Positions 14,330 through 51,614 are shown, counted from the first letter of the stretch. The stretch: 64,000 nucleotides of DNA from IMGVR_UViG_3300046167_000825:225015-289014, one strand, 5' to 3'. Program-made: numbers and translations. The notes: generated by a model not told the origin, from the sequence alone.

Positions 14330-14914
14330 ATGAGTACGGATAAATATGACTTTTGGAACGGCTTGATGTCGGGTGCATACATGAATGTGAAAGGTGCATC
14401 TGACGGGGTCGATATGTTTTTAGAGGAAAGCCTTGATAAAGAAGCAACCGATAGAACCTTATCAGATTTGACTGATAAAGGTAGAGCCAACAATGCTTTG
14501 AGTTTGCCCGTTTCCGATGGAACACGGGTGGCTTTCGTAGCGAACTTGGGTTCGATTCTGTCTTTAGATGACGCTCCCGAAAACAATGCCAAAGGGACAG
14601 TTGTTACTGTTAAGTCTGCTGGAGGGGCTATCACTTCCCACGATGGTCGTGTTTTTGTGAAATGGGATGATGGTCAGTTTCGTGCAGTCCACCAAAATCA
14701 TCTTCGTTTGGCGAGTGGACACTCCAAGACACAAAAAGCCGCTGGTAACACAATGCGAGTTGCTTCTCTTGGTGACTTGACAGACTTCTTGAGAATTAGT
14801 TCGGATACTCTTATCCATAAAGCCACAGAAGATATCTGGTCATTCAAAAAAGATGCTGACGGTTTCGTCATAGAGCGTTTGCTCGGTGAAGACGGTAAGC
14901 CTTTGAAATTATAG
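14330..14914 (+). CDS. probable head-associated protein (SH3-like segment)
   Basis: GTVV...VFVKWDDG; follows late motif at 14289. Confidence 0.55.
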   Translation: MSTDKYDFWNGLMSGAYMNVKGASDGVDMFLEESLDKEATDRTLSDLTDKGRANNALSLPVSDGTRVAFVANLGSILSLDDAPENNAKGTVVTVKSAGGAITSHDGRVFVKWDDGQFRAVHQNHLRLASGHSKTQKAAGNTMRVASLGDLTDFLRISSDTLIHKATEDIWSFKKDADGFVIERLLGEDGKPLKL

Positions 14915-14923
14915 GATTGTATA

Positions 14924-15562
14924 ATGAAGAAAATATCATTTAAGAAGAAGCAACGGTCTTTTCTGGAAGAAAAGTGGGGGGCATCCTTAGAACCGAAAAG
15001 TCAAATGACTAGAACGGCTGGTGAAGTTCGTTTCGTTAAGGATAACTCGAATGATGCTAGTTCGTGGGCTTGGAAACAAGGCCCCTCCGAACGCTCAATG
15101 CAACCCGATTACAACTTTAAGCCAAAGCGAAAGAAAGCATTAGCCAAAGTTCTCAGAAGCACAACTGCTTCTATGGGACACGCTATGAGTGCCTACAACT
15201 CTTTCACGAAAATCAAGAGTGCTGATGTATCCCCCGATGGGGCATTGGGTGGGAAAGGGTACATACAAAAGATTATGGATATGCGAAAGCAGTACATGAA
15301 TGTCGTTGAGGCGTTATCTGCTTTGAGTGACACCATTTATGACGAGATTCAAGCCCCACATTGGGCTGCGATTTCCCGTCAAGAAACGCCCGAAGACAAA
15401 GCAGAGGTCACCCAAATCATACAAGATGCCGAGAGCATTAAAGAAGACCCAGAGAGTTGGGCAGAAGAACAAGAGGAAACAATGGATGAAGATCACACCC
15501 CAATGGGCAAGACTGCTTCTTCAAAATCTATTCCTAAAAAGTATTTAAGAGGTGACAAATGA
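14924..15562 (+). CDS. probable head-associated protein
   Basis: Core bounded by RTA-G and KTA-S sites. Confidence 0.6.
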   Translation: MKKISFKKKQRSFLEEKWGASLEPKSQMTRTAGEVRFVKDNSNDASSWAWKQGPSERSMQPDYNFKPKRKKALAKVLRSTTASMGHAMSAYNSFTKIKSADVSPDGALGGKGYIQKIMDMRKQYMNVVEALSALSDTIYDEIQAPHWAAISRQETPEDKAEVTQIIQDAESIKEDPESWAEEQEETMDEDHTPMGKTASSKSIPKKYLRGDK

Positions 15563-17631
15563 GTTCAAAAATACCATCAGACCATCTAGTTCCTAGAGGT
15601 CTAAACGGCTTGATCGATACCTACCCCGATATGAACTACGGCTTGGGGACATTGGAGAAGACTTTCATGACAGATGGCACAGCCGACTTCACTTCGGGAC
15701 TCCCCGATGGGATAGTTCGTGGTGAGGATGAAGGTCTTGGTGATCTTGGTGATTTTATGAAAGAAGGGAACATTGCTGATATGTCTTTCATTGATATTGA
15801 AGGCGATGCTCACATCCAAAGTCTGCCCGAATATGGTGAAGCAGACAGTTCGCTCGAATCTGCTTGGGGAGAACTACAAACTCCAGCCATATATGCTGAA
15901 CACCAAAAAGATTTGACAGCCATTCCCCGTGCCATAACTCAGACTGAAGTAGAAGAAGATGTCCTAGAAGAAGTCGCCATGAAATGTGCGAGGTTGTTGC
16001 ATAATGGTGCGAGCATGAAGAATCTCCAGCGAATCGCTTTCGACCGATTGGGTTCTGATGTTACGGAACTTCGTGAGGATTTTGAATACCTCACGGAAGA
16101 AAGAGGCTTGATGGGAAATGTTTATGTCCTTGCGAGTGCTTACCCACAAATCGAAACGGGGCATTGGAATAAAGCCATTAAGAAGGCTTCCCCACACGCT
16201 CAGTACTTGTTGATTGATGACGGTCACGCTCTATCAAGCCAAGAGACATTCAATGGAATGAAAGTGGTTTTGGATGTTCCTTACAAGCAAGCCTTTGAGG
16301 TCTATAAGCCTTTACTTGAAGCCTCTGGTCGTAAACTAGCCTCTGGTGATTCAAGGGCTGTCCTCAAACAAGCCTTCCTAACTACGCCTCAGAAGAAAAT
16401 CCAAGAGGTATTCCATGAGAAGGCATACAGAGTCGTTGACACTGTTTCCATGAAGGAAGCCCAACAACAGTTCGGGGAATACACCCCAGAAGAACAAAGA
16501 GTTTATCAAGATAGTGAACGCCAAGATAGAATCGCACTCAAAAAAGCCCACAAGAAACTAGCCAGTGCTTACCGTGCTGGGATGATGAGCCGAGATGAAT
16601 TGAAGAAATTGGCGGGTCTGCGTAGTCACACTCAAATCGAACTAGAACTACATAGGCTGAAACTCAAGAGTCACGCTGCCTCTGAATCTTATTCTGGTGC
16701 AAAAAACTCTATCGCCAATCAAGAATCTTTGAAGCATGAACAAGGAGATATCACTGGGCGAGTTAAGAAAGCGAAAGAAGAAAAACGAGTTGCTTCCGTG
16801 AGGGCAAAAGTTGCTGTTATTAAACAAGCAATCGACAGAGGTGTTCGTGGGAATGAACTAGCCCGTATCATTAAGCAGAAACTCAACAAAGCAGACCTCC
16901 GTATTGCTTCTCCGATATTAAATCCCATCTTGAAAGAAACCAATGCACTCGCTCTCCCTTCTGCTCAGACGGAAGAATATAGTGGTGCTTCTTTCACAGC
17001 CCACCAAGAACATCGAAGAACCGCCCATGTCGAGAAGTTATCTCAAACTGAGATAGCCATCGGTAAAATGGCTCGTTGGACTAGACAACAGATGACAGAA
17101 GGGACAATCGGAAAAACTCTCACGGCTATGCTAAAGACCAAGTTCGCTTCCCCCTTCTTGAAGAAAGCCTCAACCACAATCCAAGAAATCCGAACATCCC
17201 ATGAAGGCTTGTCTGGGCATCTTTATGTGGATGCTGAGGCGTATGCCTCTCCCGTTGGGACAAAAGGTTGTGATGAAGGTGGCTTGAAGCACCGAGCCAA
17301 TCAGTTGCCTTTCGTTATGGGGATGGACAGATGTGGTTCTTGTTCTTTTGCCAGTCGTAAAGCCGATGGTACTTCTGTTTGTCAGAAATACAACAAGCCG
17401 ATTATCACCGAACTCCCTTCTGAGTCTAAAGACTACCAAGCAGAGAATATCCGAATGGCAGATGCCAGTGATGCTGAAATAACGGCTTCTATTTTTGCTT
17501 CTCGATACGAACCCTCAGAGTTCAATCTAGCGAACTCCGAACTAGATAACTTTTCCTTTGAAGAAATGGCGACAGCAGAAACTCTCTCAAATGTCTTTTT
17601 CGGTGGGATGGAGATACACGATGACGAATAA
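15559..17631 (+). CDS. 690-aa probable head or core protein with C-terminal Cys cluster
   Basis: Long ORF in head operon; C..CGSC..C; multiple [KR]xA sites. Confidence 0.65.
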   Translation: MSSKIPSDHLVPRGLNGLIDTYPDMNYGLGTLEKTFMTDGTADFTSGLPDGIVRGEDEGLGDLGDFMKEGNIADMSFIDIEGDAHIQSLPEYGEADSSLESAWGELQTPAIYAEHQKDLTAIPRAITQTEVEEDVLEEVAMKCARLLHNGASMKNLQRIAFDRLGSDVTELREDFEYLTEERGLMGNVYVLASAYPQIETGHWNKAIKKASPHAQYLLIDDGHALSSQETFNGMKVVLDVPYKQAFEVYKPLLEASGRKLASGDSRAVLKQAFLTTPQKKIQEVFHEKAYRVVDTVSMKEAQQQFGEYTPEEQRVYQDSERQDRIALKKAHKKLASAYRAGMMSRDELKKLAGLRSHTQIELELHRLKLKSHAASESYSGAKNSIANQESLKHEQGDITGRVKKAKEEKRVASVRAKVAVIKQAIDRGVRGNELARIIKQKLNKADLRIASPILNPILKETNALALPSAQTEEYSGASFTAHQEHRRTAHVEKLSQTEIAIGKMARWTRQQMTEGTIGKTLTAMLKTKFASPFLKKASTTIQEIRTSHEGLSGHLYVDAEAYASPVGTKGCDEGGLKHRANQLPFVMGMDRCGSCSFASRKADGTSVCQKYNKPIITELPSESKDYQAENIRMADASDAEITASIFASRYEPSEFNLANSELDNFSFEEMATAETLSNVFFGGMEIHDDE

Positions 17632-18397
17632 AGAAGCGGGTATGCCTCAGAACCCAGAAATACTAGGTCAAGTTTTGCATGATGTCCTTTGTACTTTGCG
17701 AACTATGTATGTTCATTATCAGAACTTACATTGGGAGAGTAAAGGCGATTCCTTTTACAGCGACCATCTTTTGTTCCAACGCTTGTATGAAGGCGTGGCA
17801 GAAGAAACAGATGCACTCGCTGAGAAGATTCTTGGCTTGACGGGACAGACCAAATGGGTTTCTGACCTCCATACTTTCCAACACGGTCATGATACTTTAC
17901 AGATATGGTACGAGTTCACTAAAGGTGACGATTCAACTAGCCGTGCTTTCTTCTCTGAGATGTACTTCCAAGAACAACTCGATTATGCTCGTGCTGTCCT
18001 AGAAGAAAGCAACAATATGACTTACGGTTTGGATGACTTTCTAGGAGGTCTGGCTTCAAAACACGAGGAACATGTTTATCTTCTCCGTCAAAGATGGGGC
18101 AAAGTAGAACATGAATCACGAGTGGCAAGTGGTGCTGGACATCATTTCCATGACAACCCCGAAAAGAGAGAGGTTCGTCAACTTCAGCAGAGCAAAGCGA
18201 AAGGCAATGCCATCACAGACAAACCCTCCGATGCACCACCGACTCCCTCTGATATCTTGGAAGATAAGGGTAAAGAGTTCTCTACTCTATCTCGTTATGT
18301 TATTAACACGGCTCAACCGACCAAGAAGCCGATGCCCTCATCTCGTGCCGAACTCCCAAAACAAGCCAAGCGAGTTCGCCTAACAAGGAGTAAGTAA
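17621..18397 (+). CDS. Dps/ferritin-like protein with C-terminal extension
   Basis: NLHW.SKG..FYSDHLLF..LY......D.LAE ferroxidase-centre pattern. Confidence 0.8.
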   Translation: MTNKEAGMPQNPEILGQVLHDVLCTLRTMYVHYQNLHWESKGDSFYSDHLLFQRLYEGVAEETDALAEKILGLTGQTKWVSDLHTFQHGHDTLQIWYEFTKGDDSTSRAFFSEMYFQEQLDYARAVLEESNNMTYGLDDFLGGLASKHEEHVYLLRQRWGKVEHESRVASGAGHHFHDNPEKREVRQLQQSKAKGNAITDKPSDAPPTPSDILEDKGKEFSTLSRYVINTAQPTKKPMPSSRAELPKQAKRVRLTRSK

Positions 18398-18999: not shown

Positions 19000-19009
19000 G
19001 GGGTGATAA

Positions 19010-19750
19010 ATGAGTTCTGGAATACCTAAACCAAATGTCAACAAACAAGAGATTCTTGAAGCCTTACCTTTGGAGATCAGCCGAATTGCGGTGACGACCA
19101 AAGAAGGGGAAGTCAAGTATCGGAAAGTCGAAGAAGTCGAACTAGAAGACATCTTGATGTTCAACAAGAGCAATCAACCCGTTGTGATGAGAGGCAAGGC
19201 TGGGAGACCCTCCGATCTCCCCACATTGGATTTGCCCTCTCTCCAAGACACAAGCAACTTTGTCCCTCTGCCAAATCGTCTGCAAAAACGAAAAGACTTG
19301 GCTGTTGCACAAACACCTCAGCCAACGGCTCTGAACTATCAAAATGATAGGGTTCTCGCACAAGTGAGTCAAGACCCCGAATCCTTAGATGTCCTCCATT
19401 CCGTGATGATGGGCTTGGCAGAAGAAGCAGCCGCTATGGCTCAAGCGAGAGTTTCACTTGAAGCACAAGGGAAGAACACCTCCAATGTGTCATCAAAGCG
19501 TGTATCGGCATTGCGAGCCATTGGTGATACATGGATGAAGCGAAAGGAACAGTTGGGGGGTAAGGGAATCGACTTGGAGGGTTTGGCTTTCAAGAGAGTT
19601 TTCGGATTCACAATGGAAACTTTTCGTAAAGCACTCACTCAATCCAACATTCGTCCAGAACAGATTGAGGTTATCTTCGCAAAACTAGCGAACTTGATGG
19701 GTGATGATTGGGTAACTGAAGCGAAGAAAAGAGCAGATGGGGATGACTAA
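19010..19750 (+). CDS. putative terminase small subunit
   Basis: Helical protein immediately upstream of and coupled to the large terminase; positional inference only. Confidence 0.4.
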   Translation: MSSGIPKPNVNKQEILEALPLEISRIAVTTKEGEVKYRKVEEVELEDILMFNKSNQPVVMRGKAGRPSDLPTLDLPSLQDTSNFVPLPNRLQKRKDLAVAQTPQPTALNYQNDRVLAQVSQDPESLDVLHSVMMGLAEEAAAMAQARVSLEAQGKNTSNVSSKRVSALRAIGDTWMKRKEQLGGKGIDLEGLAFKRVFGFTMETFRKALTQSNIRPEQIEVIFAKLANLMGDDWVTEAKKRADGDD

Positions 19751-21588
19751 TGTCTGGATTTCTTTCCGACATCGTGATGGGTGCTGGTCGTGTAAAAGGG
19801 ACTGAAAGTCGCTCCGTTGTTGACATCATCACTTTCATCGAAAGTGCATGGGGTTTGCAAATGCGATTATTCCCCGTTCAGAAAATCATACTGAAAGCAC
19901 ATTACGGTATCCCCCTAGATGACACAGAAAAGACAGTCCCTTATTCCGATTGGAGAAGGGAGAATGTCCAGATGCTGACAGAAGCCGAATACCTCCGATT
20001 ATTGCATAAAGAGGGTCGGTGTAATATCTCTGAGGTGACGGAAGGACACGAAAGACGAGAGATGATTTTATCTGTGGGGAGACGGAGTGGGAAGACAACA
20101 ATATCTGCTTGTATCGCTGCCTATGAAACATACAAGTTGATTTCCAAAGGTGACCCACAAGGGTTCTATGGTTTGCCTAGTTCCAACGTTATTCAGTTAA
20201 TAAGTGTTGCGACAGACAAAGACCAAGCGGGATTACTCTACAACGAGGTGAGTGGTCACTTTCGCAATTGCTCTTTCTTCACTCCCTACTCTGCTAACAA
20301 CACCATGTCCTATGCGAGATTTCAAACCCCTATGGACATTGAAAGATATGGCTCTTATTCAGAGGACAACAGTGCCAACGCCAATATCAAAGTGACCTTC
20401 CGTTCTTGTGTTGCGAAGGGGCTTCGTGGGGCTGGTAATATCTGTGTTATCCTTGATGAGGTCGCTCACTTTACAGACAAGGGACAAAGTGGTGCAGAAG
20501 CCGTATATAACGCTGTGACACCTTCTACCTCAGCCTATTCACAGAAAGACCCCAACAATAAATCAAAGCCCATAGGTGAGGTTGAGGGGCGTATTATATC
20601 CATCTCCTCTCCATTGGGGAAACAAGGGTTGTTCTACAAATTGTTTAATACAGCATTTCGTGGTGGAGCAGCCAGTGCTAATATGTTGGCTGTTCAAGCA
20701 CCCACTTGGGAAGTGAATCCCACTGTTCCAGCCACCGAGTTCGCTAAACATTATGTTAAAGACCCTCGTGTGTTTTTCACGGAATATGGGGCTGTGTTCT
20801 CTGACCGAACAAGAGGTTGGATAGAGGATTCCAAAGACCTCTTGGCGTGCGTGGATGACTCCCGAAAAGAAGTTAAAAAAGGCAAAACACGAGTTCCCTA
20901 TTTCATGGGAATCGACTTGGCTCTTGTTGGTGATGGCACGGCTGTGGCTATTGGGCATCTCGAAGAGATTGATGGGGAGAATAAGATAATCCTCGATCTC
21001 ATAGCCCATATTAAGGCTGGAGAAGGGGATTATGCTGATAGGGAACGCTTGGAGTTCGATGATGTGGCTGATTGGATACTCGGTTGGACAAAGAAGTTCT
21101 ATGTGAAAGAAGGTATCTTCGATCAATGGGCTGGGATTCCTTTTGAGCAAGCCCTCGCCAAAAGAGGTTTGAAGAATATCAAGTCTACACACTTCACCAA
21201 GAATCTCACATCACAGATATTTCAGAACTTCAAAGATTTGATGTTCGACAAGAAAATGATTCTCTATAATGACCCAGTACCCAAAGACGGTGAACTGTGT
21301 CCCTACTTAGAGGAAATTATGGAACTCCAAGCCGAGATCCATAGCAAGCACATCATCACGGTGGCTGCCCCTCAAGTCGAAGGAAAGCATGACGATATGT
21401 CGGATGCTTTAGTTCGGATGGTTTGGTCGGCTTCCCAGAATATCACAAAGCAACTGCGTGTTTCTATGGCGAATGGTCGTAATGCCTTCGGTCATCAAAC
21501 CACCACAAGTGACCTAGTTCGTAGGCGAACTAGAGCCTTACAAAAGGGGTCACACCCATCCCGTCAATCACGCAAATGGCGAAAATAG
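19750..21588 (+). CDS. terminase large subunit
   Basis: GRRSGKT Walker A, VILDE Walker B, ISS coupling motif, RNase H-like GIDLA and HDDMSDA. Confidence 0.93.
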   Translation: MSGFLSDIVMGAGRVKGTESRSVVDIITFIESAWGLQMRLFPVQKIILKAHYGIPLDDTEKTVPYSDWRRENVQMLTEAEYLRLLHKEGRCNISEVTEGHERREMILSVGRRSGKTTISACIAAYETYKLISKGDPQGFYGLPSSNVIQLISVATDKDQAGLLYNEVSGHFRNCSFFTPYSANNTMSYARFQTPMDIERYGSYSEDNSANANIKVTFRSCVAKGLRGAGNICVILDEVAHFTDKGQSGAEAVYNAVTPSTSAYSQKDPNNKSKPIGEVEGRIISISSPLGKQGLFYKLFNTAFRGGAASANMLAVQAPTWEVNPTVPATEFAKHYVKDPRVFFTEYGAVFSDRTRGWIEDSKDLLACVDDSRKEVKKGKTRVPYFMGIDLALVGDGTAVAIGHLEEIDGENKIILDLIAHIKAGEGDYADRERLEFDDVADWILGWTKKFYVKEGIFDQWAGIPFEQALAKRGLKNIKSTHFTKNLTSQIFQNFKDLMFDKKMILYNDPVPKDGELCPYLEEIMELQAEIHSKHIITVAAPQVEGKHDDMSDALVRMVWSASQNITKQLRVSMANGRNAFGHQTTTSDLVRRRTRALQKGSHPSRQSRKWRK

Positions 21589-21870: not shown

Positions 21871-22170
21871 ATGGGAAGATACAGAGCAAGAAACACAGAC
21901 CCCGTTGAAAGGGATGTTCATAAGAACATAGCCGAAGCCGAGCGTTATCTGAAAAGAGCGTTGTCGGTTCTTTCTTCTGTTCGTGGGAATCCCTCTATAC
22001 GGAAAGCACGGTATAATCAACTAGAGCAAATGCTCCAAGAATCCGTGAAGGTTTTATCTTCTCCTCCTCGATTGACACATGCTCATGATAAAAACGACCC
22101 CGACTTGAATCCAAAGGTCGCAGAGGAACAACGGAAAAAACGAATGGAACGGAAAAGAGGTGATAAATGA
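21871..22170 (+). CDS. basic hypothetical protein
   Basis: ATGA overlap with portal. Confidence 0.6.
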   Translation: MGRYRARNTDPVERDVHKNIAEAERYLKRALSVLSSVRGNPSIRKARYNQLEQMLQESVKVLSSPPRLTHAHDKNDPDLNPKVAEEQRKKRMERKRGDK

Positions 22171-23849
22171 CAAAAAAATCTGGTGTGGCAGTCGGTAAAG
22201 TTCCTTCTCGTGCGAAAGTACACACGGGAAAACCTCGTAAAGTTGTGGCTAGTTCAATGAAAGTTGGTGGGTTACAGACCTATTCTGGTGGCGAAGGGTC
22301 TGGTGGGAACTTCTATTCTCCCGAACTGAGTACCGATTTCCTTGAACTCCCACAGAGTATGCACGAGAGATGGAATTACTTCCGTTTCTTCTATCGTTCA
22401 GAACCTTTCGTGGGTCAAGCGATTGATCTTCACACCGAACTTCCCCTTTCAAAAATCCGTCTGGGTTTCCCGAACTACATCAAAGACAGAGAGATGGCGA
22501 AGGAGGCATTGGACTTCTGTCAGAAGTGGTCTAGGAAAATCGGATTACTTCACCGTTTGATTGAGATCGTCCATGAATACAATCTCATTGGTGAAGTGTT
22601 TATCTTCATGGAAGATGTGACTTCAGACCCACCCGATGATCTTAAATATGAAGTCAGACGAGAACTGCTTGATGATGGGACAGTCCAAGAGGAACTTGTA
22701 GAACGAGAGGATGCCAAAGAACTGCAAGTGAAATGGTTGAAAAAGAACTACAAGGGTTGGACAGCCCTCCGAGTTCTCCCCCCAGAGCAAACCCATGTTC
22801 AATCGTTTCCATTCACGGATGAGAAGATTATTGAACTTATCCCCGATTCTAAAACAAAGGACATTATCTCACAAGCAGATAGTGGTGACCCAACAGCAAA
22901 GCGTATTGTGGACTCCATGCCTAGAGGTGTGGTGGAAGCCGTCCTTGAAGGGAAGAATATCCCCTTGAACACCGATCCAGATGCGGGTTCTTTCGTCTGC
23001 TATCTCGCTCGTAAGAAATCACAGTATGAGGACAGAGGGCATTCCATCCTTGAGAGATGTATCCGAACTCTCGTGTTCCGAGATAAACTTCGTCAAGCCA
23101 ACACTTCTATCGCTTCAAGGCACATGACCCCCATCCGTTTGGTCTATGGTGAAGATATGGATCAAGCCGATGTGGAAGCATTGAGAGAGCAAGTGGATTT
23201 GGCTCTTGCTGATCCCGACTTCTCTATCATAGCGAACTTTGAAATCCGATGGGAGGAAATGGGTTCTGACCAACGCCTCCTTGATCTTGGTTCTGAATAT
23301 GACCTCACTGATCGTCAGTTGTATGCTGGTCTTGGTGTGACAGAAGGCTTACTCTCTGGTGAGAGTTCTTATAGTGGTGACCGTATCAACTTGGAAGTCA
23401 TCAACACGAGGTACATGCTTCTCCGAGAAATCCTACAAGACTTGGTTGAGGAGAAAATGCTCAAACCAATGTGTGCTAGGATGGGTTTCATTGAGGAAGA
23501 TGAATACGGAAATGAACATGTGGTTTATCCCACACTTTCTTTCACAAGACTTGCACTCAGAGATAACAATGACACTTTCGATGCCTTGTTCAATCTCTAT
23601 CAGAAGGGTTCATTGGATGTGGATATCATCTTGGAACTCTTGAACATTGACCCAGTAGCAACCAAAGAGAAACTAGAACGAGATATGTTCACACTCAACG
23701 ATAGTCAGTTCAATGAGGTTCTACGAGGTATCTATGGTGAGGCTGGTCGTGCATTAGCCGAGAACTCAGATGCCCTTGAAAAGATAGCCGAGAATCTAGG
23801 TCTGACCTACGAGAAGCCCGAAGAAGAAGGTGGCGGTGGTAGATTCTGA
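22167..23849 (+). CDS. portal protein
   Basis: 560 aa after terminase; EPFVGQAID, GEVFI, RGHSILE, AGLGV motifs typical of portals. Confidence 0.85.
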   Translation: MTKKSGVAVGKVPSRAKVHTGKPRKVVASSMKVGGLQTYSGGEGSGGNFYSPELSTDFLELPQSMHERWNYFRFFYRSEPFVGQAIDLHTELPLSKIRLGFPNYIKDREMAKEALDFCQKWSRKIGLLHRLIEIVHEYNLIGEVFIFMEDVTSDPPDDLKYEVRRELLDDGTVQEELVEREDAKELQVKWLKKNYKGWTALRVLPPEQTHVQSFPFTDEKIIELIPDSKTKDIISQADSGDPTAKRIVDSMPRGVVEAVLEGKNIPLNTDPDAGSFVCYLARKKSQYEDRGHSILERCIRTLVFRDKLRQANTSIASRHMTPIRLVYGEDMDQADVEALREQVDLALADPDFSIIANFEIRWEEMGSDQRLLDLGSEYDLTDRQLYAGLGVTEGLLSGESSYSGDRINLEVINTRYMLLREILQDLVEEKMLKPMCARMGFIEEDEYGNEHVVYPTLSFTRLALRDNNDTFDALFNLYQKGSLDVDIILELLNIDPVATKEKLERDMFTLNDSQFNEVLRGIYGEAGRALAENSDALEKIAENLGLTYEKPEEEGGGGRF

Positions 23850-28173: not shown

Positions 28174-28839
28174 ATGAAAAAATTCGCTACACGGGCAATT
28201 GTTGCTGATCTAGACAACCTTGCTGATCTTTTCCAAAACGCTGGTTCTGAACTCGGTGTTCCAACTCGTATCGCTATGGATTTCGCATATCGTTGTGACC
28301 TTTTGTCTGATGTCATCGAAAAATTGGCTGGTGACGAAGAAGCAGAAGAGGAAGAGGAAGAAGAAGAAGTAAAAGAAGAAGAAACTGAACTAGAAAAGAA
28401 GGCTTTTGCTGCATTACAAACTTTATCTCGTCTTGCTTCTGAAGAAGAAGAAAAGGAAGAAGAGAAGGAAGAAGAGAAGGAAGAAGAAGCAGAAGAAGAG
28501 GCAAAGGAATCTTCTAAAAAGGCTACTTTGAAAGAACTTTCTCGTTTAATCAATCGTCTTGCTGGCGATGATGAAGAAAGCGAAGAAGAAGAAAAGGAAG
28601 AAGAAGCAGAAGAGGAAAAGGAAGAAGCAAAAAAAGAGGCTCGTCAAATAACAAAACGCCAAGCCCTTGCTACCCTTCTTCGTATTGCTGAAGAAGAAGA
28701 AAAAGAACTGGGACAACAAGAGGATCAAGCCCTTGAAACTGAAACTGATGAGCCTTATATGAAGGGCTTTTCTGAAGGTTCAAAGGATGTAGCCGAGGTT
28801 GCTAAGGCTGCTGCGACTTACCGTAAACGTCTTAAGTAA
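28174..28839 (+). CDS. Glu-rich prohead core or scaffold-like protein
   Basis: Poly-E tracts alternating with amphipathic helices ending in [KR]xA. Confidence 0.65.
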   Translation: MKKFATRAIVADLDNLADLFQNAGSELGVPTRIAMDFAYRCDLLSDVIEKLAGDEEAEEEEEEEEVKEEETELEKKAFAALQTLSRLASEEEEKEEEKEEEKEEEAEEEAKESSKKATLKELSRLINRLAGDDEESEEEEKEEEAEEEKEEAKKEARQITKRQALATLLRIAEEEEKELGQQEDQALETETDEPYMKGFSEGSKDVAEVAKAAATYRKRLK

Positions 28840-28852: not shown

Positions 28853-29437
28853 TTGAAGAAACAATCTGCAAGATATGATCTTCTCGCTGAGGAGTTGTCC
28901 GTTGGGGATGCTGTCATCCCCATCGGTCAGCCCATTGGTGGTGTTGGTCGAATTACGAAAATCTATGTCGGCATTGGCATGGCAGATGTTCAATTCAATG
29001 GGGGTAATCGTAGGATTCCCGTTGAGGACTTGAAGTTTGTTGCTGAGGAGGGATATTCTTTTGCTCCCGATCACGACACAACTGCTGGTGGAGAGATTGA
29101 TGAAGAACCCTTTGGTTCTCGTGAACTCTCAGTTCAACCACCTCATGAGGCTTTCACACCCGTGTTGAATGATATGTTCTATGAACAGACTCTTCCAACA
29201 AAGGTCGCCCAACGCTTTGTGAAAAAAGCATTGTATTGGGCTGGTCGTGATCGTAAATATCGAGCCACGAGATCCGAGTGTGGTGCTTCCTATCTATGTC
29301 CAAAGTGTGTAGACCCCATTGTGATGAAGAAAGCCATCTACAAACGGTTAGAGGGTGCTTCCGAGCGTCTGTGGGGTTGCCCCTCTTGTATGTTCTTAAT
29401 CAAGGACACTGACATTGTGCGTTGGGGGGGTGAATAA
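28853..29437 (+). CDS. SH3-like + zinc-ribbon protein with KVAQRFV tag
   Basis: TTG start after GAGG; CPKC...CPSC. Confidence 0.6.
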   Translation: MKKQSARYDLLAEELSVGDAVIPIGQPIGGVGRITKIYVGIGMADVQFNGGNRRIPVEDLKFVAEEGYSFAPDHDTTAGGEIDEEPFGSRELSVQPPHEAFTPVLNDMFYEQTLPTKVAQRFVKKALYWAGRDRKYRATRSECGASYLCPKCVDPIVMKKAIYKRLEGASERLWGCPSCMFLIKDTDIVRWGGE

Positions 29438-30849
29438 TGGCATTTATGAAATATGCTTCTGCTCTTGTGGTTTCTCCCGAAGCCAATCAAAGAACTTGGG
29501 GTGGTGTTCGCACTGCCTCTAGTAATACAGCCAATCTGGTTGGTCAAGCCGAGAAGATTTTCGGTGGGAAGTTCAATCCCTCTGATTATCTTTTAACACA
29601 TTGTACTATTGTGGCTTCTGTTGATACAGATGATGCTCCCAATGTAAAACTCGGTTCTGTCACTGAGAATGGTAAGAAGATCAATCGTAAGTATTCTAAC
29701 TATCTCATAACTCCTTCGACATCTAAGTATGTGAATAACAACGGAGATTCTTGGGATCGTGATGTTCTGTTGAAGTCTTATCAAACATTTGTTGGTAGTC
29801 ATAACTTCCAAGAGCATGTTCAGATTGAGGACTTGTCGAAGGGTCGTATCATTGATGCCGTTGCTCGTGATGTCGGGGAATCTATTTATGTGGATATCCT
29901 AGTTGCGACAGACCGTAAGCACGCCCAGTTGGTTGAAGATATCCAGAGTGGTCGTTTAGGCACATTGTCTATGGGATGTACAGTCGATAGCACCATTTGC
30001 ACCAAGTGTGGGAATGTGGCAGTCGATGACACTGAGTTCTGTGACCATGTGAAGTATGAAAAACGAAACACTTTTATTGATAACAGTGGCAAGAAAAGAA
30101 TAGTGGCTGAGTTGTGTGGTCATACCGATATGGGCGACACGGCTGGAGTGACATTCATAGAAGCCTCTTGGGTTGCTGTACCCGCCTTTACTGGTGCAGT
30201 AATGCGAAATATTTTAACGGCAGACGAGGTTAGTTCGGATGTAGTTCGTAAAGCGAACGAGATTCTTTCAGTGCCTCCAGCCGAATGGTCAGACGAAGCC
30301 CAAAAGAAAGTCGCACGGAATGTGGTGTCTTTCGGTTTCGATGACGAAGAAGAAGATGAGGGTGGCGATAGCGAACCCACATCCCCTATTGATGAATTAG
30401 AAGATGAGATGGTATCAATGGTGAAGAAACGAGTTCTTCAACGGCTTAAATCCGAAATGTCCCCCAAAGAGGAGGCAAAGAAAGATGCACCAAAGCCCGA
30501 AGATAGTACCACTTATCAAAATGATACAGTGATCAAAGAAGGCACACTAAGAAAGGCTCACGCTATGGGTCAAAAACTTGGTGTTCTTCAAGGGATCGCA
30601 AAGGTTTCTCACACCAGAGAAGATTTTATTGATGGTATTGCTCTCCTTGATTATGAGAGGGGTTCAAAAACATCGGTATCTGTTTATCGTGCCAGCCTAA
30701 AGGTCGGTTCGGTATCAAAGTACGCCACACTGAAAGGTTTCTTGCTTGCTAGTAAGAAGGCTCTCGGTGGTACGATGACTAAATCTGAGGTTACTCAGAT
30801 GATTCGACTCGCTCGATTGCTTGACTTTTGGTCAGCACAAAAACATTAA
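29437..30849 (+). CDS. prohead maturation protease
   Basis: H(N)FQEH, LSMGC, FIEASWVAVPA motifs; located before scaffold and capsid genes. Confidence 0.75.
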   Translation: MAFMKYASALVVSPEANQRTWGGVRTASSNTANLVGQAEKIFGGKFNPSDYLLTHCTIVASVDTDDAPNVKLGSVTENGKKINRKYSNYLITPSTSKYVNNNGDSWDRDVLLKSYQTFVGSHNFQEHVQIEDLSKGRIIDAVARDVGESIYVDILVATDRKHAQLVEDIQSGRLGTLSMGCTVDSTICTKCGNVAVDDTEFCDHVKYEKRNTFIDNSGKKRIVAELCGHTDMGDTAGVTFIEASWVAVPAFTGAVMRNILTADEVSSDVVRKANEILSVPPAEWSDEAQKKVARNVVSFGFDDEEEDEGGDSEPTSPIDELEDEMVSMVKKRVLQRLKSEMSPKEEAKKDAPKPEDSTTYQNDTVIKEGTLRKAHAMGQKLGVLQGIAKVSHTREDFIDGIALLDYERGSKTSVSVYRASLKVGSVSKYATLKGFLLASKKALGGTMTKSEVTQMIRLARLLDFWSAQKH

Positions 30850-30882: not shown

Positions 30883-31911
30883 ATGCGTAGAAGCAGACTT
30901 ACTTGGAATAAAAAGGCAGATAATGCCCCCGCTACCCCAAATGAGGGGTATGACCATCCAGCAGATCAAGGACAACAACCCGTTGAGAAATACTTCATTG
31001 ACAACGATGGAAACGGTGTTGGTTCAGAACCTTCAGATTTCGCAGAAGATGTTCACCAACCACCTTATAACAAAGGTGACCACCCAGCGACTCCACACGA
31101 GGGACACGATCACCCAGCGATGAAACAAGCCGCTCGTGATATCCGTGCTTCTGTTGAGCGTAAAGCATCTAAATGTATTCGTATCGCACAAGCAACACTC
31201 GGAAAAGGTGCTTCTATTGAAGACTTAGAAGATCAAGCATTGGCATTCATGAATATGGCTGATGATGATGTTGCTGCAACTTTGGATCGTATGTCAGAAA
31301 TGGAAGCGTACCAAATGGCAGAAGAACCAACTGCTACTTCAATGTTCGCAGAAGAAGATTCTGAACTAGAAGGTTTGATGGCTGAGTTCATGGCAGAAAT
31401 CGAATCAGATGAACACGAAAGTACAGAAGAAGCAATGCTTTCTGAAATGCTTGCTCAAGAAGAAGCCGAAGAAACAATGGGCGAAGAAGAAATAATGCTT
31501 TCTGAAATGCTTGCCGAAGAAGAAATGGCTAACCAAAATGCTCCAGAACACTTTGAAGCAGAAGAAGAAGAAGCAATGGGTGATGAGTTAATGCTTGCCG
31601 AAGAAGGTCTTGATGCTATGGGACTTGATGACGGTATGGGCGATGACGAATTGCTTGCTGGATTGTTCGCTGGTAAGTTCGCTGGTGAAGAAGAAGCCGA
31701 AGAAGAAGAAGCAGAAGAAGAAGCAGAGGAAGAAGAAAAAGAAGCAGAAGAAGCAGCCGCTTCTAAGAAAGCATCTCGCCTTCGTCCCCGTGCTCGTAAA
31801 GCATCAAAGGGAGTTAAGACTCTTGGAAATGTTTCTAAAACAGCCTCTTCAGAAATGAACGAACTGTCAAAGTTGTGGGAAAGTGCTCCTAACATCAGTG
31901 ACTTGTTCTAA
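30883..31911 (+). CDS. scaffolding protein
   Basis: Very acidic, E/M/A-rich, between protease and capsid genes. Confidence 0.7.
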   Translation: MRRSRLTWNKKADNAPATPNEGYDHPADQGQQPVEKYFIDNDGNGVGSEPSDFAEDVHQPPYNKGDHPATPHEGHDHPAMKQAARDIRASVERKASKCIRIAQATLGKGASIEDLEDQALAFMNMADDDVAATLDRMSEMEAYQMAEEPTATSMFAEEDSELEGLMAEFMAEIESDEHESTEEAMLSEMLAQEEAEETMGEEEIMLSEMLAEEEMANQNAPEHFEAEEEEAMGDELMLAEEGLDAMGLDDGMGDDELLAGLFAGKFAGEEEAEEEEAEEEAEEEEKEAEEAAASKKASRLRPRARKASKGVKTLGNVSKTASSEMNELSKLWESAPNISDLF

Positions 31912-32124: not shown

Positions 32125-32775
32125 ATGGCTTTACTTGGACAAGCGAGTGGTGCGTTTACAGAAAGTTCTTCATCTTTACGGATTCTACATGTTGGTATCC
32201 GAAACACTGTCGGTGTTATTACAGATGAGGCTTTCGAGCAAACTAACCCTCCCGTACTTTCTGCATCTGGTGCTGGATCTACCATCTCAGATCAAGTATC
32301 TACAACAATCTTCGGAGTTCTCTCTGGATCTGTTGCTTTCACTCGACCAGACATTGACGAAAATGTAATCGGTGGCCCAGCGGCTACTGCTGCTTTGTTG
32401 CTTTCTGCTGGATGTCGACCACTTGGTGTATTCATTAACCACGCTGCTGGATATTCTTTCGAGAACACACCCGCGGCTGCTTCTAACAAGTGTCCTTATG
32501 TTTCTGCACAAGGTTGCTATGCAAACTCTTTGTTTGAAACCAACATTATCACTAATGGTGGAACTACTGGTACTGCCGTTGCTGCTGTTGCTACTGTACC
32601 AGTTACTGCTTATGCTGCTGGACAAAACTTGGTTGCTTCTGTTAATGGTTACTTGACCAACGAAGCCGCTGACGGATATGAAGCGACACAAGGTGGAACT
32701 AATACTATTATCGGAATCGTGAAGATGGCCCCAGATAATACTCAAGATGAACTCGTTTACGACCAACGCATTTAA
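32125..32775 (+). CDS. capsid decoration/cement protein
   Basis: A/G/T-rich, directly upstream of MCP, highly biased codons. Confidence 0.65.
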   Translation: MALLGQASGAFTESSSSLRILHVGIRNTVGVITDEAFEQTNPPVLSASGAGSTISDQVSTTIFGVLSGSVAFTRPDIDENVIGGPAATAALLLSAGCRPLGVFINHAAGYSFENTPAAASNKCPYVSAQGCYANSLFETNIITNGGTTGTAVAAVATVPVTAYAAGQNLVASVNGYLTNEAADGYEATQGGTNTIIGIVKMAPDNTQDELVYDQRI

Positions 32776-32788
32776 GGAGGAGACTACT

Positions 32789-33658
32789 ATGAGCGTATCA
32801 AATGCTGTGAAGCAAAAAATCATTTCTGATTATATCAAGACTCCTCAAGGGCGTGCGAAACTTGCAGCGTCTATGACTCAACCATTACGTTTGCGTAGAG
32901 ATTACGCATCGGTTGGTCGTAAGACATTTCTTGTTGAACAACTGCCAGACGGAGCGTTGCCAATTTATGACAAAGATCCAGATGTAACTGCGTATGTGGT
33001 TGGTGAAGAAGGACAAAACATCCTTGCAATCACTAAGCCAAGACGTGTTATCTTTCCTTTGTTTGAGATTGCATCTAACCCCGAAATCCCTTTGACACAA
33101 ATCAAAGAAAGACGATTCGACCTTATTGAGCGTGCTCAAGATTTGGCTCGTGCCCAAATCCAAGCGGCAGAAGATGAGCGAGTATTCTCTACTCTTGATG
33201 CTGTTGCTCAGAACGGTTTCGATTCTGTTGGAAACCAAAACCCAGACATCCCAGTTGTTGCTCCAGTTACTGGTGCAGTCCTTGCTGATGCTTTTGCGTT
33301 AATCGAACGCCATGACCTTCGTGTTGCACGAATCTTCATGAACGCTCGTGACTATGCAGATTTGCGTAAGTTCGGTCGTGACATCTTGGATATCGAATCT
33401 CAGCGTGACTTGTTGAAGACTGGTCTTATGGCTACTCTTTGGGGTGCTCAGATCATCACTTCTCGTATCGTTCCCGTTGGAACAGTATATGTTGCTTGTG
33501 AGCCAGAGTTCTTTGGTCGCATGCCAGTTCGTACTGAGTTGACTGTATTGTCTGCTGATGATCCAAAGGCTCGTACTATTGGGTTCTCTGTATTCGAGAA
33601 TATCGGTATCGGTTGTTTCAATCCTCGTGGATTGGTTCGATTGTCTATCACTCGATAA
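32789..33658 (+). CDS. major capsid protein (HK97 fold)
   Basis: AGGAGG RBS, strong codon bias; IQAAEDERVF, IFMNARDYADL, LWGAQII motifs; followed by a terminator. Confidence 0.88.
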   Translation: MSVSNAVKQKIISDYIKTPQGRAKLAASMTQPLRLRRDYASVGRKTFLVEQLPDGALPIYDKDPDVTAYVVGEEGQNILAITKPRRVIFPLFEIASNPEIPLTQIKERRFDLIERAQDLARAQIQAAEDERVFSTLDAVAQNGFDSVGNQNPDIPVVAPVTGAVLADAFALIERHDLRVARIFMNARDYADLRKFGRDILDIESQRDLLKTGLMATLWGAQIITSRIVPVGTVYVACEPEFFGRMPVRTELTVLSADDPKARTIGFSVFENIGIGCFNPRGLVRLSITR

Positions 33659-46680: not shown

Positions 46681-46693
46681 TTAGGAGAATCCA

Positions 46694-48877: not shown

Positions 48878-49318
48878 ATGGGGAACTCAAGCATTCGTGT
48901 GGCATATAGATATTTGACAGCACGAGGGAAAGCCAAGAAAGATGTTGGACACGGTGGGTTAGACGAATGGTTTTCTGGTCATGGCACTGGGAAGAACAAG
49001 AGTGAGGGTGAAGCCACTTGGGGTGATTGGGTGTCAATATCTCCCGTAGATAAAACCATAGAGAAAGAAGACGGCACAAAGAAGAAGATACAGAAAGGGG
49101 ATATCGTGGGGGACTGTGGTATCAGCAAAGACCCCGAATGGAAAGACACCACCAACAATGGCAAATCACCCTTGAAGTGTATGCCTCGTCAGAAAGCCCA
49201 CAAGATGGATAAGAAGGAAAGAGCCGAACTAGCCAAAGGGAAGCAGAAAGCAGAGAAGGGGAGCAAAGGGAAGAAACCCGTGAACACCCCCACTTTCAAG
49301 AAAGAAGATAAGAAGTAA
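48878..49318 (+). CDS. basic probable internal head protein with N-terminal RVAYRYL tag
   Basis: GGLDEWF...WVSI...CG...KCMP. Confidence 0.7.
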   Translation: MGNSSIRVAYRYLTARGKAKKDVGHGGLDEWFSGHGTGKNKSEGEATWGDWVSISPVDKTIEKEDGTKKKIQKGDIVGDCGISKDPEWKDTTNNGKSPLKCMPRQKAHKMDKKERAELAKGKQKAEKGSKGKKPVNTPTFKKEDKK

Positions 49319-49321
49319 ATA

Positions 49322-50257: not shown

Positions 50258-50325
50258 TTCGGTATTCTCCCTTTATCTAAAACACAGATATAGAATGGTT
50301 ATTATCCTATAAGGTGAGGGTAGAT

Positions 50326-50628: not shown

Positions 50629-50696
50629 CTCCTCCCCTGCCCCTTTGAGAGAATGGTGGGTATCATACAACGCAACAGATAACTAAGGAGTCAACC

Positions 50697-50969
50697 ATGT
50701 CTGAAACTACTGTAATAGGTGATGTTGAAGAAACCACAATCACACAACTTAACTCTCTCCGTCAAGCAGCGAAGGATATCACTGCCGAGATCGGAAGCCT
50801 CGAAATCCGTAAAGCCCGTATTATTGGGTCAATGGGTGAAATCGAAACGAAAGCACAAGAACTGCTCGCCAATGAAGCAAAGCGTTTGAACATCCCAGAA
50901 GGTACTGCTTGGCAAGTCACTCCAGAAGGGAAAGCCATTGCTCTCTCAACAGAAGCCAACAACGGATAA
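50697..50969 (+). CDS. small coiled-coil protein
   Basis: AAGGAG RBS; heptad pattern. Confidence 0.65.
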   Translation: MSETTVIGDVEETTITQLNSLRQAAKDITAEIGSLEIRKARIIGSMGEIETKAQELLANEAKRLNIPEGTAWQVTPEGKAIALSTEANNG

Positions 50970-51035
50970 GCCTCCCAATAATAGGTTTATATTCAGAGGG
51001 CTGTGAATACACAGTCCTTTTTTTATGGAGATTCT

Positions 51036-51614
51036 ATGTCTAACTTACGGAATAAAGTCATTCGTTTGGCACATCAAAACCCCGATTTACGCCCTCATCT
51101 TCTTCCTTTGCTTAAAGAAGCCTCAAAAGGACAAGCAAAAGCCGTTATCCAAAGCATCTTGAAAAGTCTTGACTTGAACGGTCTTGACCTTGAGGACTGT
51201 GTAGATGCTGTTCAACTCGACTCTCAGTGGCAAGCCTTCCTAGAAAGTCAGTACAAAATCGAGTTCAAGAAATCATACAAACTCTTGTCAAATGCTTATT
51301 CAAGAGATAATATAAGGGCTTTTCAAGAAACCTTCCCTCGCTCTAAGTTTTTCCAAAATGTGGATAGCACCAAAACGAGTAAATATGCTCTGGCTATCGT
51401 CAAGACGATGAAAGAAATCCTTCGGAGCAAAAAATCGTGGGAGTTCGGTGTTATGTTCGATGATATCGTTAAATATTGGCAAGGAGATGCTGCTGGGCGA
51501 ACTGCGTTGGTACAATCCGATGGTTTTCGTACAGATGTGATGTTCTTAACCACCGAGAAGAACTACGAGTCTCTTATCTGGGAAGAAACAGAGAGGTATT
51601 TACGTTCTCTCTAG
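51036..51614 (+). CDS. probable internal head protein with N-terminal leader LRNKVIRLAHQNPDLRPHLLPLLKEA
   Basis: Late motif at 50979; leader ends in KEA. Confidence 0.7.
   Translation: MSNLRNKVIRLAHQNPDLRPHLLPLLKEASKGQAKAVIQSILKSLDLNGLDLEDCVDAVQLDSQWQAFLESQYKIEFKKSYKLLSNAYSRDNIRAFQETFPRSKFFQNVDSTKTSKYALAIVKTMKEILRSKKSWEFGVMFDDIVKYWQGDAAGRTALVQSDGFRTDVMFLTTEKNYESLIWEETERYLRSL

What the first reader, a model, noticed from the sequence alone, without database searches (positions are those of the whole stretch)
14330..51122. Recurrent [KR]-x-[AG] sites at N-termini and domain boundaries: predicted maturation-protease code
Seen: late proteins often begin with a short leader ending in KxA (MKKFA 28174, MAFMKYA 29437, MKKKA 40138, MKKEA 40521, MKIA 44563, MTNKEA 17621, ...WNKKA 30883, ...LLKEA 51036). 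Folded domains are flanked by RTA/KTA/KKA/KQA/KEA/RVA: RTA-G and KTA-S in 14924, RTA and KKA around the Topo IB core, KEA and RVA around the Dps core, KQA before the tag in 49322. The Glu-rich 28174 protein is punctuated by KLA, KKA, RLA, KKA, RLA, KEA, RQA and RIA. Established: T4 gp21 and phiKZ gp175 cleave after E in short motifs that are dense in scaffold and cargo propeptides. Inference: the 29437 protease cleaves after [KR]-x-A/G, a different specificity, and releases cargo domains from polyproteins. The motif is short, so some matches are chance.
Basis: partly seen in the sequence, partly recalled or inferred. Interest (0 to 1): 0.75.

Follow-up and report, generated by a model that had tools for sequence, protein, structure and literature searches.

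The report
Predicted cleavage code of huge-phage protease

Summary
The window is the last 64 kb of a 289-kb huge-phage record. It holds TerL, portal, a prohead protease (29437-30849) and the major capsid protein.

The loose motif [KR]-x-[AG] is not enriched: 274 observed against 273 expected in 65 ORFs. N-terminal occurrences are 9 against 5.9. Gly at the third position is not enriched (0.85x).

A sharper motif, [KR]-x-A-S, is real:
- It ranks first among non-trivial patterns in an unbiased scan.
- Its three richest ORFs of 284 in the record are 15559, 30883 and 14330.
- It is enriched 12-fold in 107 homologues of the 30883 protein and 7-fold in 22 homologues of 15559.
- It recurs in the equivalent proteins of the distant cultured phage Tunturi_5.
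- In the 30883 family the last site lies 20-25 residues before the C-terminus in about 75% of homologues, ahead of a conserved tail.

The protease has the T4 gp21 / herpesvirus assemblin fold (Z 10.3 and 7.2). Assemblin cuts A|S.

A 27-residue leader (51036) ends in K-x-A. It heads at least 56 unrelated proteins in related phages.

Cleavage itself is inferred, not shown. I rate this a new variant of a known kind.

The parts
29437..30849 (+). Prohead maturation protease, 470 aa. It has a catalytic domain (about residues 40-250) with an embedded Cys-rich (probable Zn) insertion, a disordered acidic linker (about 288-315), a long helix, and a helical C-terminal domain (about 393-470).
   Evidence: phrog_18299 'head maturation protease' E 1.7e-13. 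AF2 model pLDDT 82.6. Best PDB matches are T4 gp21 5jbl (Foldseek prob 0.93; VIA Z 10.3, 145 of 165 residues) and VZV protease 1vzv (Z 7.2). Invariant H55, S61, E126, H127, S178, C188, C191, C202 in 71 sequences.
29509..29520 (+). RTAS (residues 25-28), a candidate N-terminal self-processing site of the protease.
   Evidence: [KR]xA[STGAN] falls in this alignment column in 72 of 115 homologues. See also the alignment.
30307..30318 (+). KVA-R (residues 291-294) at the junction between catalytic domain and linker. Relatives mostly have KAA-S here. This is a candidate release site.
   Evidence: The column is conserved as [KR]xA in 56 of 115 homologues. It sits at the start of the low-pLDDT linker. 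Tunturi_5 gp331 has KKVA-S just after its protease domain.
30883..31911 (+). Acidic scaffold-like protein, 342 aa, with five [KR]xAS sites (nt 31159, 31204, 31765, 31795, 31837).
   Evidence: 5 sites against 0.27 expected, second of 284 ORFs in the record. 560 against 45.5 in 107 homologues. Sites are conserved in column with P2 free.
31837..31848 (+). KTAS (residues 319-322), the last site of the scaffold-like protein, analogous to a herpesvirus maturation (M) site.
   Evidence: In 90 distinct C-termini, P3 is K/R in 84, P1 is A in 86, and P1' is S in 67 of 85, while P2 varies. The last site lies 20-25 residues from the C-terminus in 79 of the 106 homologues that have a site.
31846..31908 (+). 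Conserved C-terminal tail (S-x-E-x-N-E-L-S-K-L-W-E-S-A-P-D-V-S-x-x-F). This is a candidate shell-binding peptide that cleavage would detach.
   Evidence: L54, L57, W58, A61, P62, D63 and F68 are near-invariant in 90 sequences. The function is inferred.
28174..28839 (+). Glu-rich protein, 221 aa. It has repeated units of an acidic run followed by a K-K-A...R-L-A-[SG] helix. Candidate scaffold or core protein.
   Evidence: 11 [KR]x[AG] against 5.9. 3 [KR]xA[SG] against 0.36. 19 against 4.7 in relatives. Alignment.
15559..17631 (+). 690-aa protein of unknown fold with seven [KR]xAS sites. Candidate internal (core or ejection) protein.
   Evidence: 7 against 0.67, the top ORF of 284. 98 against 13.8 in 22 homologues, with sites 259 and 448 conserved and others turning over. 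The ESM Atlas model has pLDDT 0.43.
14330..14914 (+). 194-aa protein with three [KR]xAS sites (plus KSAG and KAAG).
   Evidence: 3 against 0.18, third of 284 ORFs. Alignment.
14924..15562 (+). 212-aa protein with RTAG (30-33) and KTAS (196-199).
   Evidence: KTAS is not conserved in the three relatives, so the evidence is weak.
17621..18397 (+). Ferritin/Dps-like domain (16-157), then RVAS (167-170, nt 18119-18130), then a separable C-terminal module of about 90 aa.
   Evidence: phrog_3636 E 4.8e-12; PF00210 23.4 bits, under the 24.5 cut-off. In L003 the C-terminal module is fused to a 40138-like domain instead.
51036..51122 (+). 29-residue N-terminal stretch: a leader of about 27 residues (M-S-N-L-R-N-K-V-I-R-L-A-H-Q-N-P-D-L-R-P-H-L-L-P-L-L) ending in K-E-A, followed by S. 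Candidate capsid-targeting propeptide.
   Evidence: The same leader heads non-homologous bodies in relatives. 69 loci were found in huge-phage contigs, several per genome. [KR]xA lies 0-2 residues after LLPLL in 48 of 56, against a 3.6% background.
32747..33658 (+). Major capsid protein (context). It has no [KR]xA[SG] site.
   Evidence: phrog_2522 E 1.4e-55. 0 sites against 5.3 expected in 13 near-identical orthologues.
22167..23849 (+). Portal protein (context).
   Evidence: phrog_16240 E 4e-32.
19750..21588 (+). Large terminase (context).
   Evidence: phrog_2 E 3.8e-21.

Best explanation
The 29437 gene encodes a serine prohead protease of the T4 gp21 / herpesvirus assemblin fold. I infer that it recognises basic-x-Ala followed by a small residue, optimally [KR]-x-A|S, with a hydrophobic preference at P5.

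Its predicted substrates are:
- the acidic scaffold-like protein 30883, which would be cut into pieces and detached from its conserved C-terminal tail;
- the Glu-rich 28174 protein;
- the protease itself, after residue 27, after its catalytic domain, and in relatives before its C-terminal domain;
- a set of candidate internal head proteins (14330, 15559, the Dps-like 17621, perhaps 14924);
- proteins carrying a shared leader of about 27 residues that ends in K-x-A (51036 and three others in the record).

Shown: the motif's enrichment, its conservation with a free P2, its restriction to these families, and the protease fold.

Inferred: that the motif is cut, that the bond is Ala|Ser, that S178 and H127 (with H55) are catalytic, and that the substrates reside in the prohead.
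For: - Fold and family.
- Gene order: protease, then the scaffold-like protein, then a small ORF, then the capsid protein. This order is conserved in relatives and in Tunturi_5.
- Motif in the window: [KR]xA[SG] occurs 43 times against 19, with 28 in seven proteins.
- Unbiased scan: it ranks 9th of 78,732 three-position patterns, behind only CxxC and poly-E patterns.
- Arrangement control: it is the only strongly enriched one of 18 arrangements of the same residue classes, 167 against 36.6. Control families (TerL, portal, capsid and others) give 37 against 40.
- Record-wide ranking: the top three of 284 ORFs are 15559, 30883 and 14330, with Poisson p 6.5e-6, 9.6e-6 and 9e-4.
- Homologue replication: 560 against 45.5 in 107 homologues of 30883 and 98 against 13.8 in 22 homologues of 15559.
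- Column conservation: P3, P1 and P1' are conserved while P2 varies.
- Site turnover: sites appear at non-homologous positions.
- Distant replication in Tunturi_5: gp332 has 4 against 0.54 and gp328 has 5 against 0.85. Of the other 17 proteins scanned, only the protease gp331 (one site, in its C-terminal tail) and the sheath (one site) have any; the remaining 15 have none.
- Phage G gp7, gp19 and portal give weaker support.
- Leader: K-x-A follows LLPLL in 48 of 56 leaders despite register shifts.
- The T4 and phiKZ-type motifs are not enriched.
- Assemblin's A|S specificity is from my own knowledge. The homology of gp21 to the herpesvirus protease and the S/A/G-x-E specificity of phiKZ-type proteases are stated in PMC5694885.
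Against: - There are no proteomic or biochemical data for this phage or any relative.
- The complex prediction of protease with the 30883 C-terminal segment gave no answer.
- Sequence profiles do not link the protein to Pfam S21, S77 or S78, and hhalign to T4 gp21 and HK97 gp4 is not significant.
- P1' is Ser in scaffold and internal proteins but variable (A, G, R, D, S) after the leader. Either P1' is tolerant or the two classes of site are not equivalent.
- The window's own protein lacks canonical sites at two positions that are conserved in relatives (KVA-R at 291; none at about 389).
- Mycobacteriophage I3, which has a 31%-identical protease domain, shows no enrichment.
- Homologous sequences are not independent samples, so the large observed/expected ratios overstate the number of independent events.
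Confidence: 0.6

Rival explanations
1. [KR]-x-A-S is a conserved short linear motif that is bound but not cut. For example, it could be a multivalent docking site for the capsid interior, portal, DNA or a chaperone.
For: Conservation and multiplicity fit a binding motif as well as a cleavage motif. Related basic-hydrophobic-Ala cores occur in two other recurrent peptides, the RVAYRFL tag and the IRLAH leader, which look like docking elements. The complex model gave no support for protease binding (which is not evidence either way).
Against: The motif sits at domain boundaries and linkers of the protease itself, and directly between a conserved leader or tail and variable bodies. That is the pattern of processing sites in T4 and herpesviruses. 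The frame P3-x-P1|P1' with Ala-Ser matches the known specificity of the same fold.
Confidence: 0.15
2. The protease does process these proteins at the motif, but the scissile bond is elsewhere, for example after the Lys/Arg, with Ala-Ser occupying P2'-P3'.
For: Sequence statistics cannot place the bond. HK97 gp5 is cut after a Lys (own knowledge).
Against: All characterised members of this fold with known motifs use the P3-x-P1 frame: L/I-x-E in T4, S/A/G-x-E in phiKZ, and V/L-x-A in herpesviruses (own knowledge). Ala, not Lys/Arg, is the most invariant position (96% at the last scaffold site).
Confidence: 0.1
3. The motif is a basophilic Ser phosphorylation site ([KR]-x-x-S).
For: Basic at -3 and Ser at 0 is the classic basophilic kinase frame (own knowledge).
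Against: Ala at -1 is as conserved as the Ser, which kinases of that class do not require. Leader sites keep K-x-A but not Ser. No Pkinase domain was found in the 289-kb record, which is 66% complete.
Confidence: 0.04
4. The pattern is chance or compositional bias in Lys/Ala/Glu-rich low-complexity proteins.
For: MKKxA starts fit the usual Lys-rich second codons (own knowledge).
Against: For [KR]-x-A-S, 17 other arrangements of the same classes range from 0.46x to 2.7x against 4.6x. The record-wide ranking, the replication in homologues and in Tunturi_5, and the column conservation also argue against chance.
Confidence: 0.02

Closest known systems
Herpesvirus assemblin (maturational protease, MEROPS S21) with its R and M sites
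   Same: Same fold class (VZV protease Z 7.2, HCMV protease Z 5.2). The predicted P1-P1' is Ala|Ser. One site lies just after the catalytic domain. One site lies about 22 residues before the scaffold's C-terminus, ahead of a conserved tail.
   Different: P3 is Lys/Arg rather than Val/Leu/Ile ([VLI]xAS is only 2.3x). The protease and scaffold are separate genes. A shared C-terminal tail between protease and scaffold was sought and not found. There is a Cys-rich insertion in the catalytic domain. There is no Pfam S21 match.
T4 gp21 prohead protease and the capsid-targeting sequences of T4 internal proteins
   Same: It is the best structural match (Z 10.3; Foldseek prob 0.93). It also makes many cuts in scaffold and core proteins. 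Short N-terminal leaders shared by unrelated packaged proteins end in the protease motif.
   Different: T4 cuts after Glu in L/I-x-E, and that motif is not enriched here (1.13x). The leader here is about 27 residues and can also sit internally or at the C-terminus. Sequence similarity is not significant.
phiKZ gp175 / SPN3US gp245 proteases of giant phages
   Same: Giant-phage setting, with many head proteins carrying motif-dense propeptides (PMC10052503, PMC5694885).
   Different: Their specificity is S/A/G-x-E or A-x-E. That motif is 0.9x here. This is a different protease lineage; the relatives here are phage G gp19, Tunturi_5 gp331 and mycobacteriophage cluster C.
HK97 gp4 (MEROPS S78)
   Same: Same broad fold family. 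A weak hhalign alignment puts S178 (T-L-S-M-G-C) on the G-M-S-V-G-F segment of gp4.
   Different: The alignment is not significant. HK97 removes a delta domain from its capsid protein, whereas this capsid protein (about 290 aa) has no delta domain and no site.
Encapsulin cargo-loading peptides
   Same: Short terminal peptides shared by unrelated cargo, including ferritin-like proteins, for loading into an HK97-fold shell. They are analogous to the leader and to the RVAYRFL tag.
   Different: Encapsulin peptides are not removed by a protease and have different sequences. Loading was not tested here.

Membership tests
Prohead protease of the gp21 / HK97 gp4 / assemblin fold | The characteristic fold of the catalytic domain | tested here: met
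   AF2 model with pLDDT above 90 over residues 40-250. T4 gp21 gives Z 10.3 with 145 of 165 residues aligned; VZV protease gives Z 7.2. gp21 chains are the top three Foldseek hits.
Prohead protease of the gp21 / HK97 gp4 / assemblin fold | Conserved catalytic Ser and His | tested here: inconclusive
   S178, H127 and H55 are invariant in 71 sequences. Inteins insert next to these motifs. Equivalence to the gp21 or gp4 catalytic residues rests only on a non-significant hhalign alignment, because no residue-level structural alignment was available.
Prohead protease of the gp21 / HK97 gp4 / assemblin fold | Gene lies in the head module between portal and capsid protein, next to a scaffold | tested here: met
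Prohead protease of the gp21 / HK97 gp4 / assemblin fold | Proteolytic activity on head proteins | not testable with these tools
   Needs biochemistry or virion proteomics.
Pfam Peptidase_S21 / S77 / S78 (sequence families) | Match above the family's gathering score | tested here: not met
   No Pfam family at E below 0.01. Only phrog_18299 and phrog_2774 match. No PDB sequence match.
Assemblin-type substrate code (V/L/I)-x-A|S | Ala at P1 and Ser at P1' in scaffold and protease | tested here: met
   This was tested statistically only. Given [KR]xA, Ser is 3.1x. Given [KR]xx[SG], Ala is 3.2x. At the last scaffold site A is 96% and S is 79%.
Assemblin-type substrate code (V/L/I)-x-A|S | Aliphatic residue at P3 | tested here: not met
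   P3 is K or R. Given xxAS, K is 4.4x, R is 3.0x and I is 2.9x. [VLI]xAS is 2.3x against 6.8x for [KR]xAS.
T4-type capsid-targeting leader | The same short N-terminal peptide on unrelated proteins of one phage | tested here: met
   Four copies in this record. 69 loci in related contigs, up to seven per contig, with similarity limited to about the first 30 residues.
T4-type capsid-targeting leader | The leader ends in the protease's motif | tested here: met
   [KR]xA lies within 0-2 residues of LLPLL in 48 of 56, against a 3.6% background. P1' is variable.
T4-type capsid-targeting leader | The leader directs packaging into the prohead and is removed | not testable with these tools
   Needs fusion-protein packaging assays and proteomics.

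The most novel reading that the evidence does not exclude
A large, mostly uncultured clade of huge phages (protease family of about 2,000 50%-identity clusters) uses a herpesvirus-like Ala|Ser maturation code with a basic P3. It pairs this with a universal removable leader of about 27 residues that loads diverse cargo proteins into the capsid. If so, the Ala|Ser specificity may be an old trait of this protease fold, and the leader would be a portable capsid-loading tag.
Probability: 0.4. Interest if true: 0.7.

Novelty: new variant of a known kind. Interest (0 to 1): 0.6.

Why it matters
Prohead protease specificity is known for only a few phages: T4, phiKZ and its relatives, and HK97. This protease family is very large (2,077 clusters at 50% identity), is annotated almost everywhere as hypothetical, and includes phage G, the largest cultured phage.

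A concrete motif, a list of predicted substrates and a predicted targeting leader would let virion proteomes of huge phages be read. They would also mark which unknown proteins are likely packaged and ejected.

The Ala|Ser pair would add a functional link between tailed-phage and herpesvirus maturation. Two cultured relatives, phage G and Tunturi_5, make the prediction directly testable.

Tried and rejected
- The loose motif [KR]x[AG] is at chance over the window and at N-termini.
- The first AF2 model, from 9 sequences, was too poor to use (pLDDT 52).
- A profile search of PDB sequences found nothing.
- hhalign against T4 gp21 and HK97 gp4 was not significant.
- Complex prediction of the protease (residues 1-290) with residues 285-342 of 30883 gave no answer, score 0.00.
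- A herpes UL26/UL26.5-style shared C-terminal tail between protease and scaffold was not supported: an L-S-x-W-E motif occurs in only 6-14 of 184 protease C-termini.
- A Topo IB domain was not found in any candidate.
- The C-terminal module of the Dps-like protein has no paralogue in the record.
- The reverse-strand ORF 23965-24219 is not a bS21 gene. It is a small Cys-rich protein.
- Mycobacteriophage I3 shows no [KR]xAS enrichment, so the code is not shared by the whole protease family.
- The ESM Atlas search for 15559 gave no lead.
- Literature: no paper on the Tunturi phages is held. The phage G capsid paper (PMC7316594) is not held. The phage G multi-omics paper gives no cleavage data.

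Full report
**Context.** The window is bases 225015-289014 of a 289-kb linear IMG/VR virus record estimated 66% complete, so it comes from a huge phage. It carries:
- a large terminase (19750-21588) and a portal (22167-23849);
- a protein matching PHROG 'head maturation protease' (29437-30849);
- a major capsid protein (32747-33658);
- a ferritin/Dps-like protein (17621-18397).

The nearest public relatives are an uncultured 485-kb phage (LR745208.1), IMG/VR contigs with 43-64% identical proteases, and Tunturiibacter phage Tunturi_5 (44%). More distant are phage G gp19, mycobacteriophage cluster C and some Erwinia jumbo phages.

**Checking the observation.** The motif as written, [KR]-x-[AG], is not enriched:
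- 274 observed against 273 expected from within-protein shuffles over 65 ORFs;
- 211 against 201 inside the stated range;
- 63 against 72 outside it.

Proteins with the motif in their first ten residues number 9, against 5.9 expected from internal windows. MKKFA of 28174 is not conserved in orthologues. So most of the N-terminal 'leaders' are unremarkable.

Five ORFs do stand out individually: 14330, 15559, 28174, 29437 and 30883, with z of 2.0 to 3.5.

**The refined motif.** Reading the sites in those proteins showed a Ser after the Ala in most of them.
- [KR]-x-A-[SG] occurs 43 times against 19 expected. Of these, 28 are in seven proteins where about 4 are expected.
- Because this refinement was made after looking at the data, I ran an unbiased scan of 78,732 three-position patterns. 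[KR].A[SG] ranks ninth, behind only CxxC-type and poly-Glu patterns.
- Among the 18 possible arrangements of the same three residue classes, only this one is strongly enriched in the seven families plus their relatives: 167 against 36.6. Control families (terminase, portal, capsid, 25120, 28799, 32125 and others) give 37 against 40.
- Conditional frequencies put the information at P3 (K 4.4x, R 3.0x), P1 (Ala 3.2x) and P1' (Ser 3.1x; Gly 1.0x). P5 shows a hydrophobic preference, and P2 is free.
- Gly at P1 is not enriched (0.85x). The T4-type and phiKZ-type x-Glu motifs are not enriched either.
- Over all 284 ORFs of the record, the three most [KR]xAS-enriched are 15559, 30883 and 14330. Their Poisson p-values are 6.5e-6, 9.6e-6 and 9e-4.

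**Evolutionary replication.**
- In 107 database homologues of the 30883 protein the motif occurs 560 times against 45.5 expected, typically five or six per protein.
- In 79 of the 106 homologues that have a site, the last site lies 20-25 residues before the C-terminus.
- In 90 distinct C-termini that last site has K/R at P3 in 84, Ala at P1 in 86, and Ser at P1' in 67 of 85. P2 is T, E, A or V.
- It is followed by a near-invariant tail, L-S-K-L-W-E-S-A-P-D-V-S-x-x-F.
- In 22 homologues of 15559 there are 98 sites against 13.8. Two positions are conserved and others turn over.
- In the protease family, [KR]xA columns sit at residues 5-7, 25-27, 291-293 (junction of catalytic domain and disordered linker) and about 389-391 (before the C-terminal helical domain).

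The cultured phage Tunturi_5 gives a nearly independent test:
- The acidic protein after the protease (gp332) has 4 sites against 0.54. One of these is K-V-A-S, 18 residues from its C-terminus.
- The protein annotated as a DNA ejection protein (gp328) has 5 against 0.85.
- The protease has one site right after its catalytic domain.
- The other 16 proteins scanned, about 6,500 residues, have one site between them (in the sheath).

Phage G gives weaker support (gp7, gp19 and portal). Mycobacteriophage I3 gives none.

**The protease.**
- With a 71-sequence alignment the AF2 model reaches pLDDT 82.6, and above 90 in the catalytic domain.
- Its best structural matches are T4 gp21 (Z 10.3, 145 of 165 residues; Foldseek probability 0.93), then varicella-zoster virus protease (Z 7.2) and cytomegalovirus protease (Z 5.2).
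- Invariant residues include H55, E126-H127, S178 in T-L-S-M-G-C, and a Cys cluster (C188, C191, C202).
- The family is very large (2,077 clusters at 50% identity), and many members carry inteins inserted next to these motifs.
- No Pfam peptidase family matches, and profile alignment to gp21 or HK97 gp4 is not significant.
- Membership of the fold is therefore shown, but membership of the curated sequence families is not.

**The leader.**
- In relatives this leader precedes unrelated bodies. It occurs four times in this record.
- It was found at 69 loci in huge-phage contigs, up to seven per contig, mostly N-terminal.
- In 48 of 56 distinct copies a [KR]-x-A starts 0-2 residues after LLPLL, against 3.6% for background windows. 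The motif is kept even when the register shifts. P1' is A, G, R, D or S.
- This is the pattern of the capsid-targeting sequences of T4 internal proteins (own knowledge).

**Interpretation.** The most economical reading has three parts.
1. The protease cuts after Ala in basic-x-Ala, best before Ser.
2. This degrades the scaffold-like proteins, detaches a shell-binding tail, trims the protease itself and removes targeting leaders.
3. The frame P3-x-P1|P1' is that of T4, phiKZ (PMC5694885) and herpesvirus proteases, and Ala|Ser is the herpesvirus pair (own knowledge).

Everything beyond enrichment, conservation and fold is inference. There are no proteomic data, and the complex model gave no answer.

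The rivals are a bound-but-uncut docking motif, a different scissile bond within the motif, and a phosphorylation site. No kinase domain was found in the record. 'Polyprotein' processing and a Topo IB cargo are not supported.

**Verdict.**
- This is a new variant of a known kind of system.
- It can be tested directly in phage G or Tunturi_5.

Noticed in passing
window 26557-26577 (25105 ORF residues 485-491), 29201-29221, 40489-40509, 41508-41528, 44926-44946, 48896-48916, and 49322-50257(-) residues 236-242: A second recurrent peptide, [RKNQ]-[VI]-[AL]-x-R-[FY]-[LMV] ('RVAYRFL tag'). It occurs 11 times in the 284 ORFs of the record against 0.2 expected from shuffles. Most copies lie within 7-12 residues of a protein terminus, and it is also present in relatives. 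In two proteins a [KR]xA-S site lies just upstream of the tag (one residue upstream in 49322). It may be a terminal docking or cargo-loading peptide, and its core resembles the I-R-L-A-H of the leader.
   Followed up: partly
G000 167873-168334, 172841-174067, 180034-180669 (outside the window); L032-L100: The 27-residue IRLAH...LLPLLK-x-A leader is multi-copy in this and related huge phages. It sits on unrelated proteins, occasionally internally or at the C-terminus.
   Followed up: yes
window 29437-30849 family; L023 10001-12877; P0047, P0056, P0124 and others: Many homologues of the protease carry one to three inteins (Pfam Hint, Hom_end and intein-splicing domains; lengths up to 1,850 aa). 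The inserts fall near residues 121-127, 182, 188-191, 203 and 229, next to the invariant His and Ser motifs.
   Followed up: partly
window 29998-30123 (protease residues 188-229): An invariant Cys cluster (C188, C191, C202, with C227/H229 nearly invariant) lies inside the protease catalytic domain. It suggests a zinc-binding insertion absent from T4 gp21.
   Followed up: no
window 18119-18397; L003 33007-33741: The C-terminal 90 residues or so of the Dps-like protein, after R-V-A-S, form a separable module. In the 485-kb relative the module is fused to a 40138-like domain instead of a ferritin-like one.
   Followed up: partly
P0295, P0297, P0333, P0347 and others (homologues of window 30883-31911): Some members of the scaffold-like family carry EF-hand calcium-binding domains.
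   Followed up: no
G000 180034-180669 (+) and 210493-211341 (-), outside the window: Two further ORFs of unknown function are enriched in [KR]xAS (4 against 0.46 and 3 against 0.26). They may be additional substrates. The neighbouring ORF 182347-183879 ends in R-L-A-S followed by a tag-like K-V-A-Y-K-W-L.
   Followed up: partly
L029 8962-13188 (Mycobacterium phage I3 gp103): In cluster C mycobacteriophages the homologous protease domain is the N-terminus of a 1,408-aa protein just upstream of the capsid gene. This is a protease fused to a long region, reminiscent of the herpesvirus protease-scaffold fusion, and it shows no [KR]xAS enrichment.
   Followed up: partly
window 13086-14282: Weak pectinesterase-like match (PF01095, E 8e-6, below the cut-off) at residues 60-115. 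This could be a beta-helix fibre or depolymerase-like protein.
   Followed up: no
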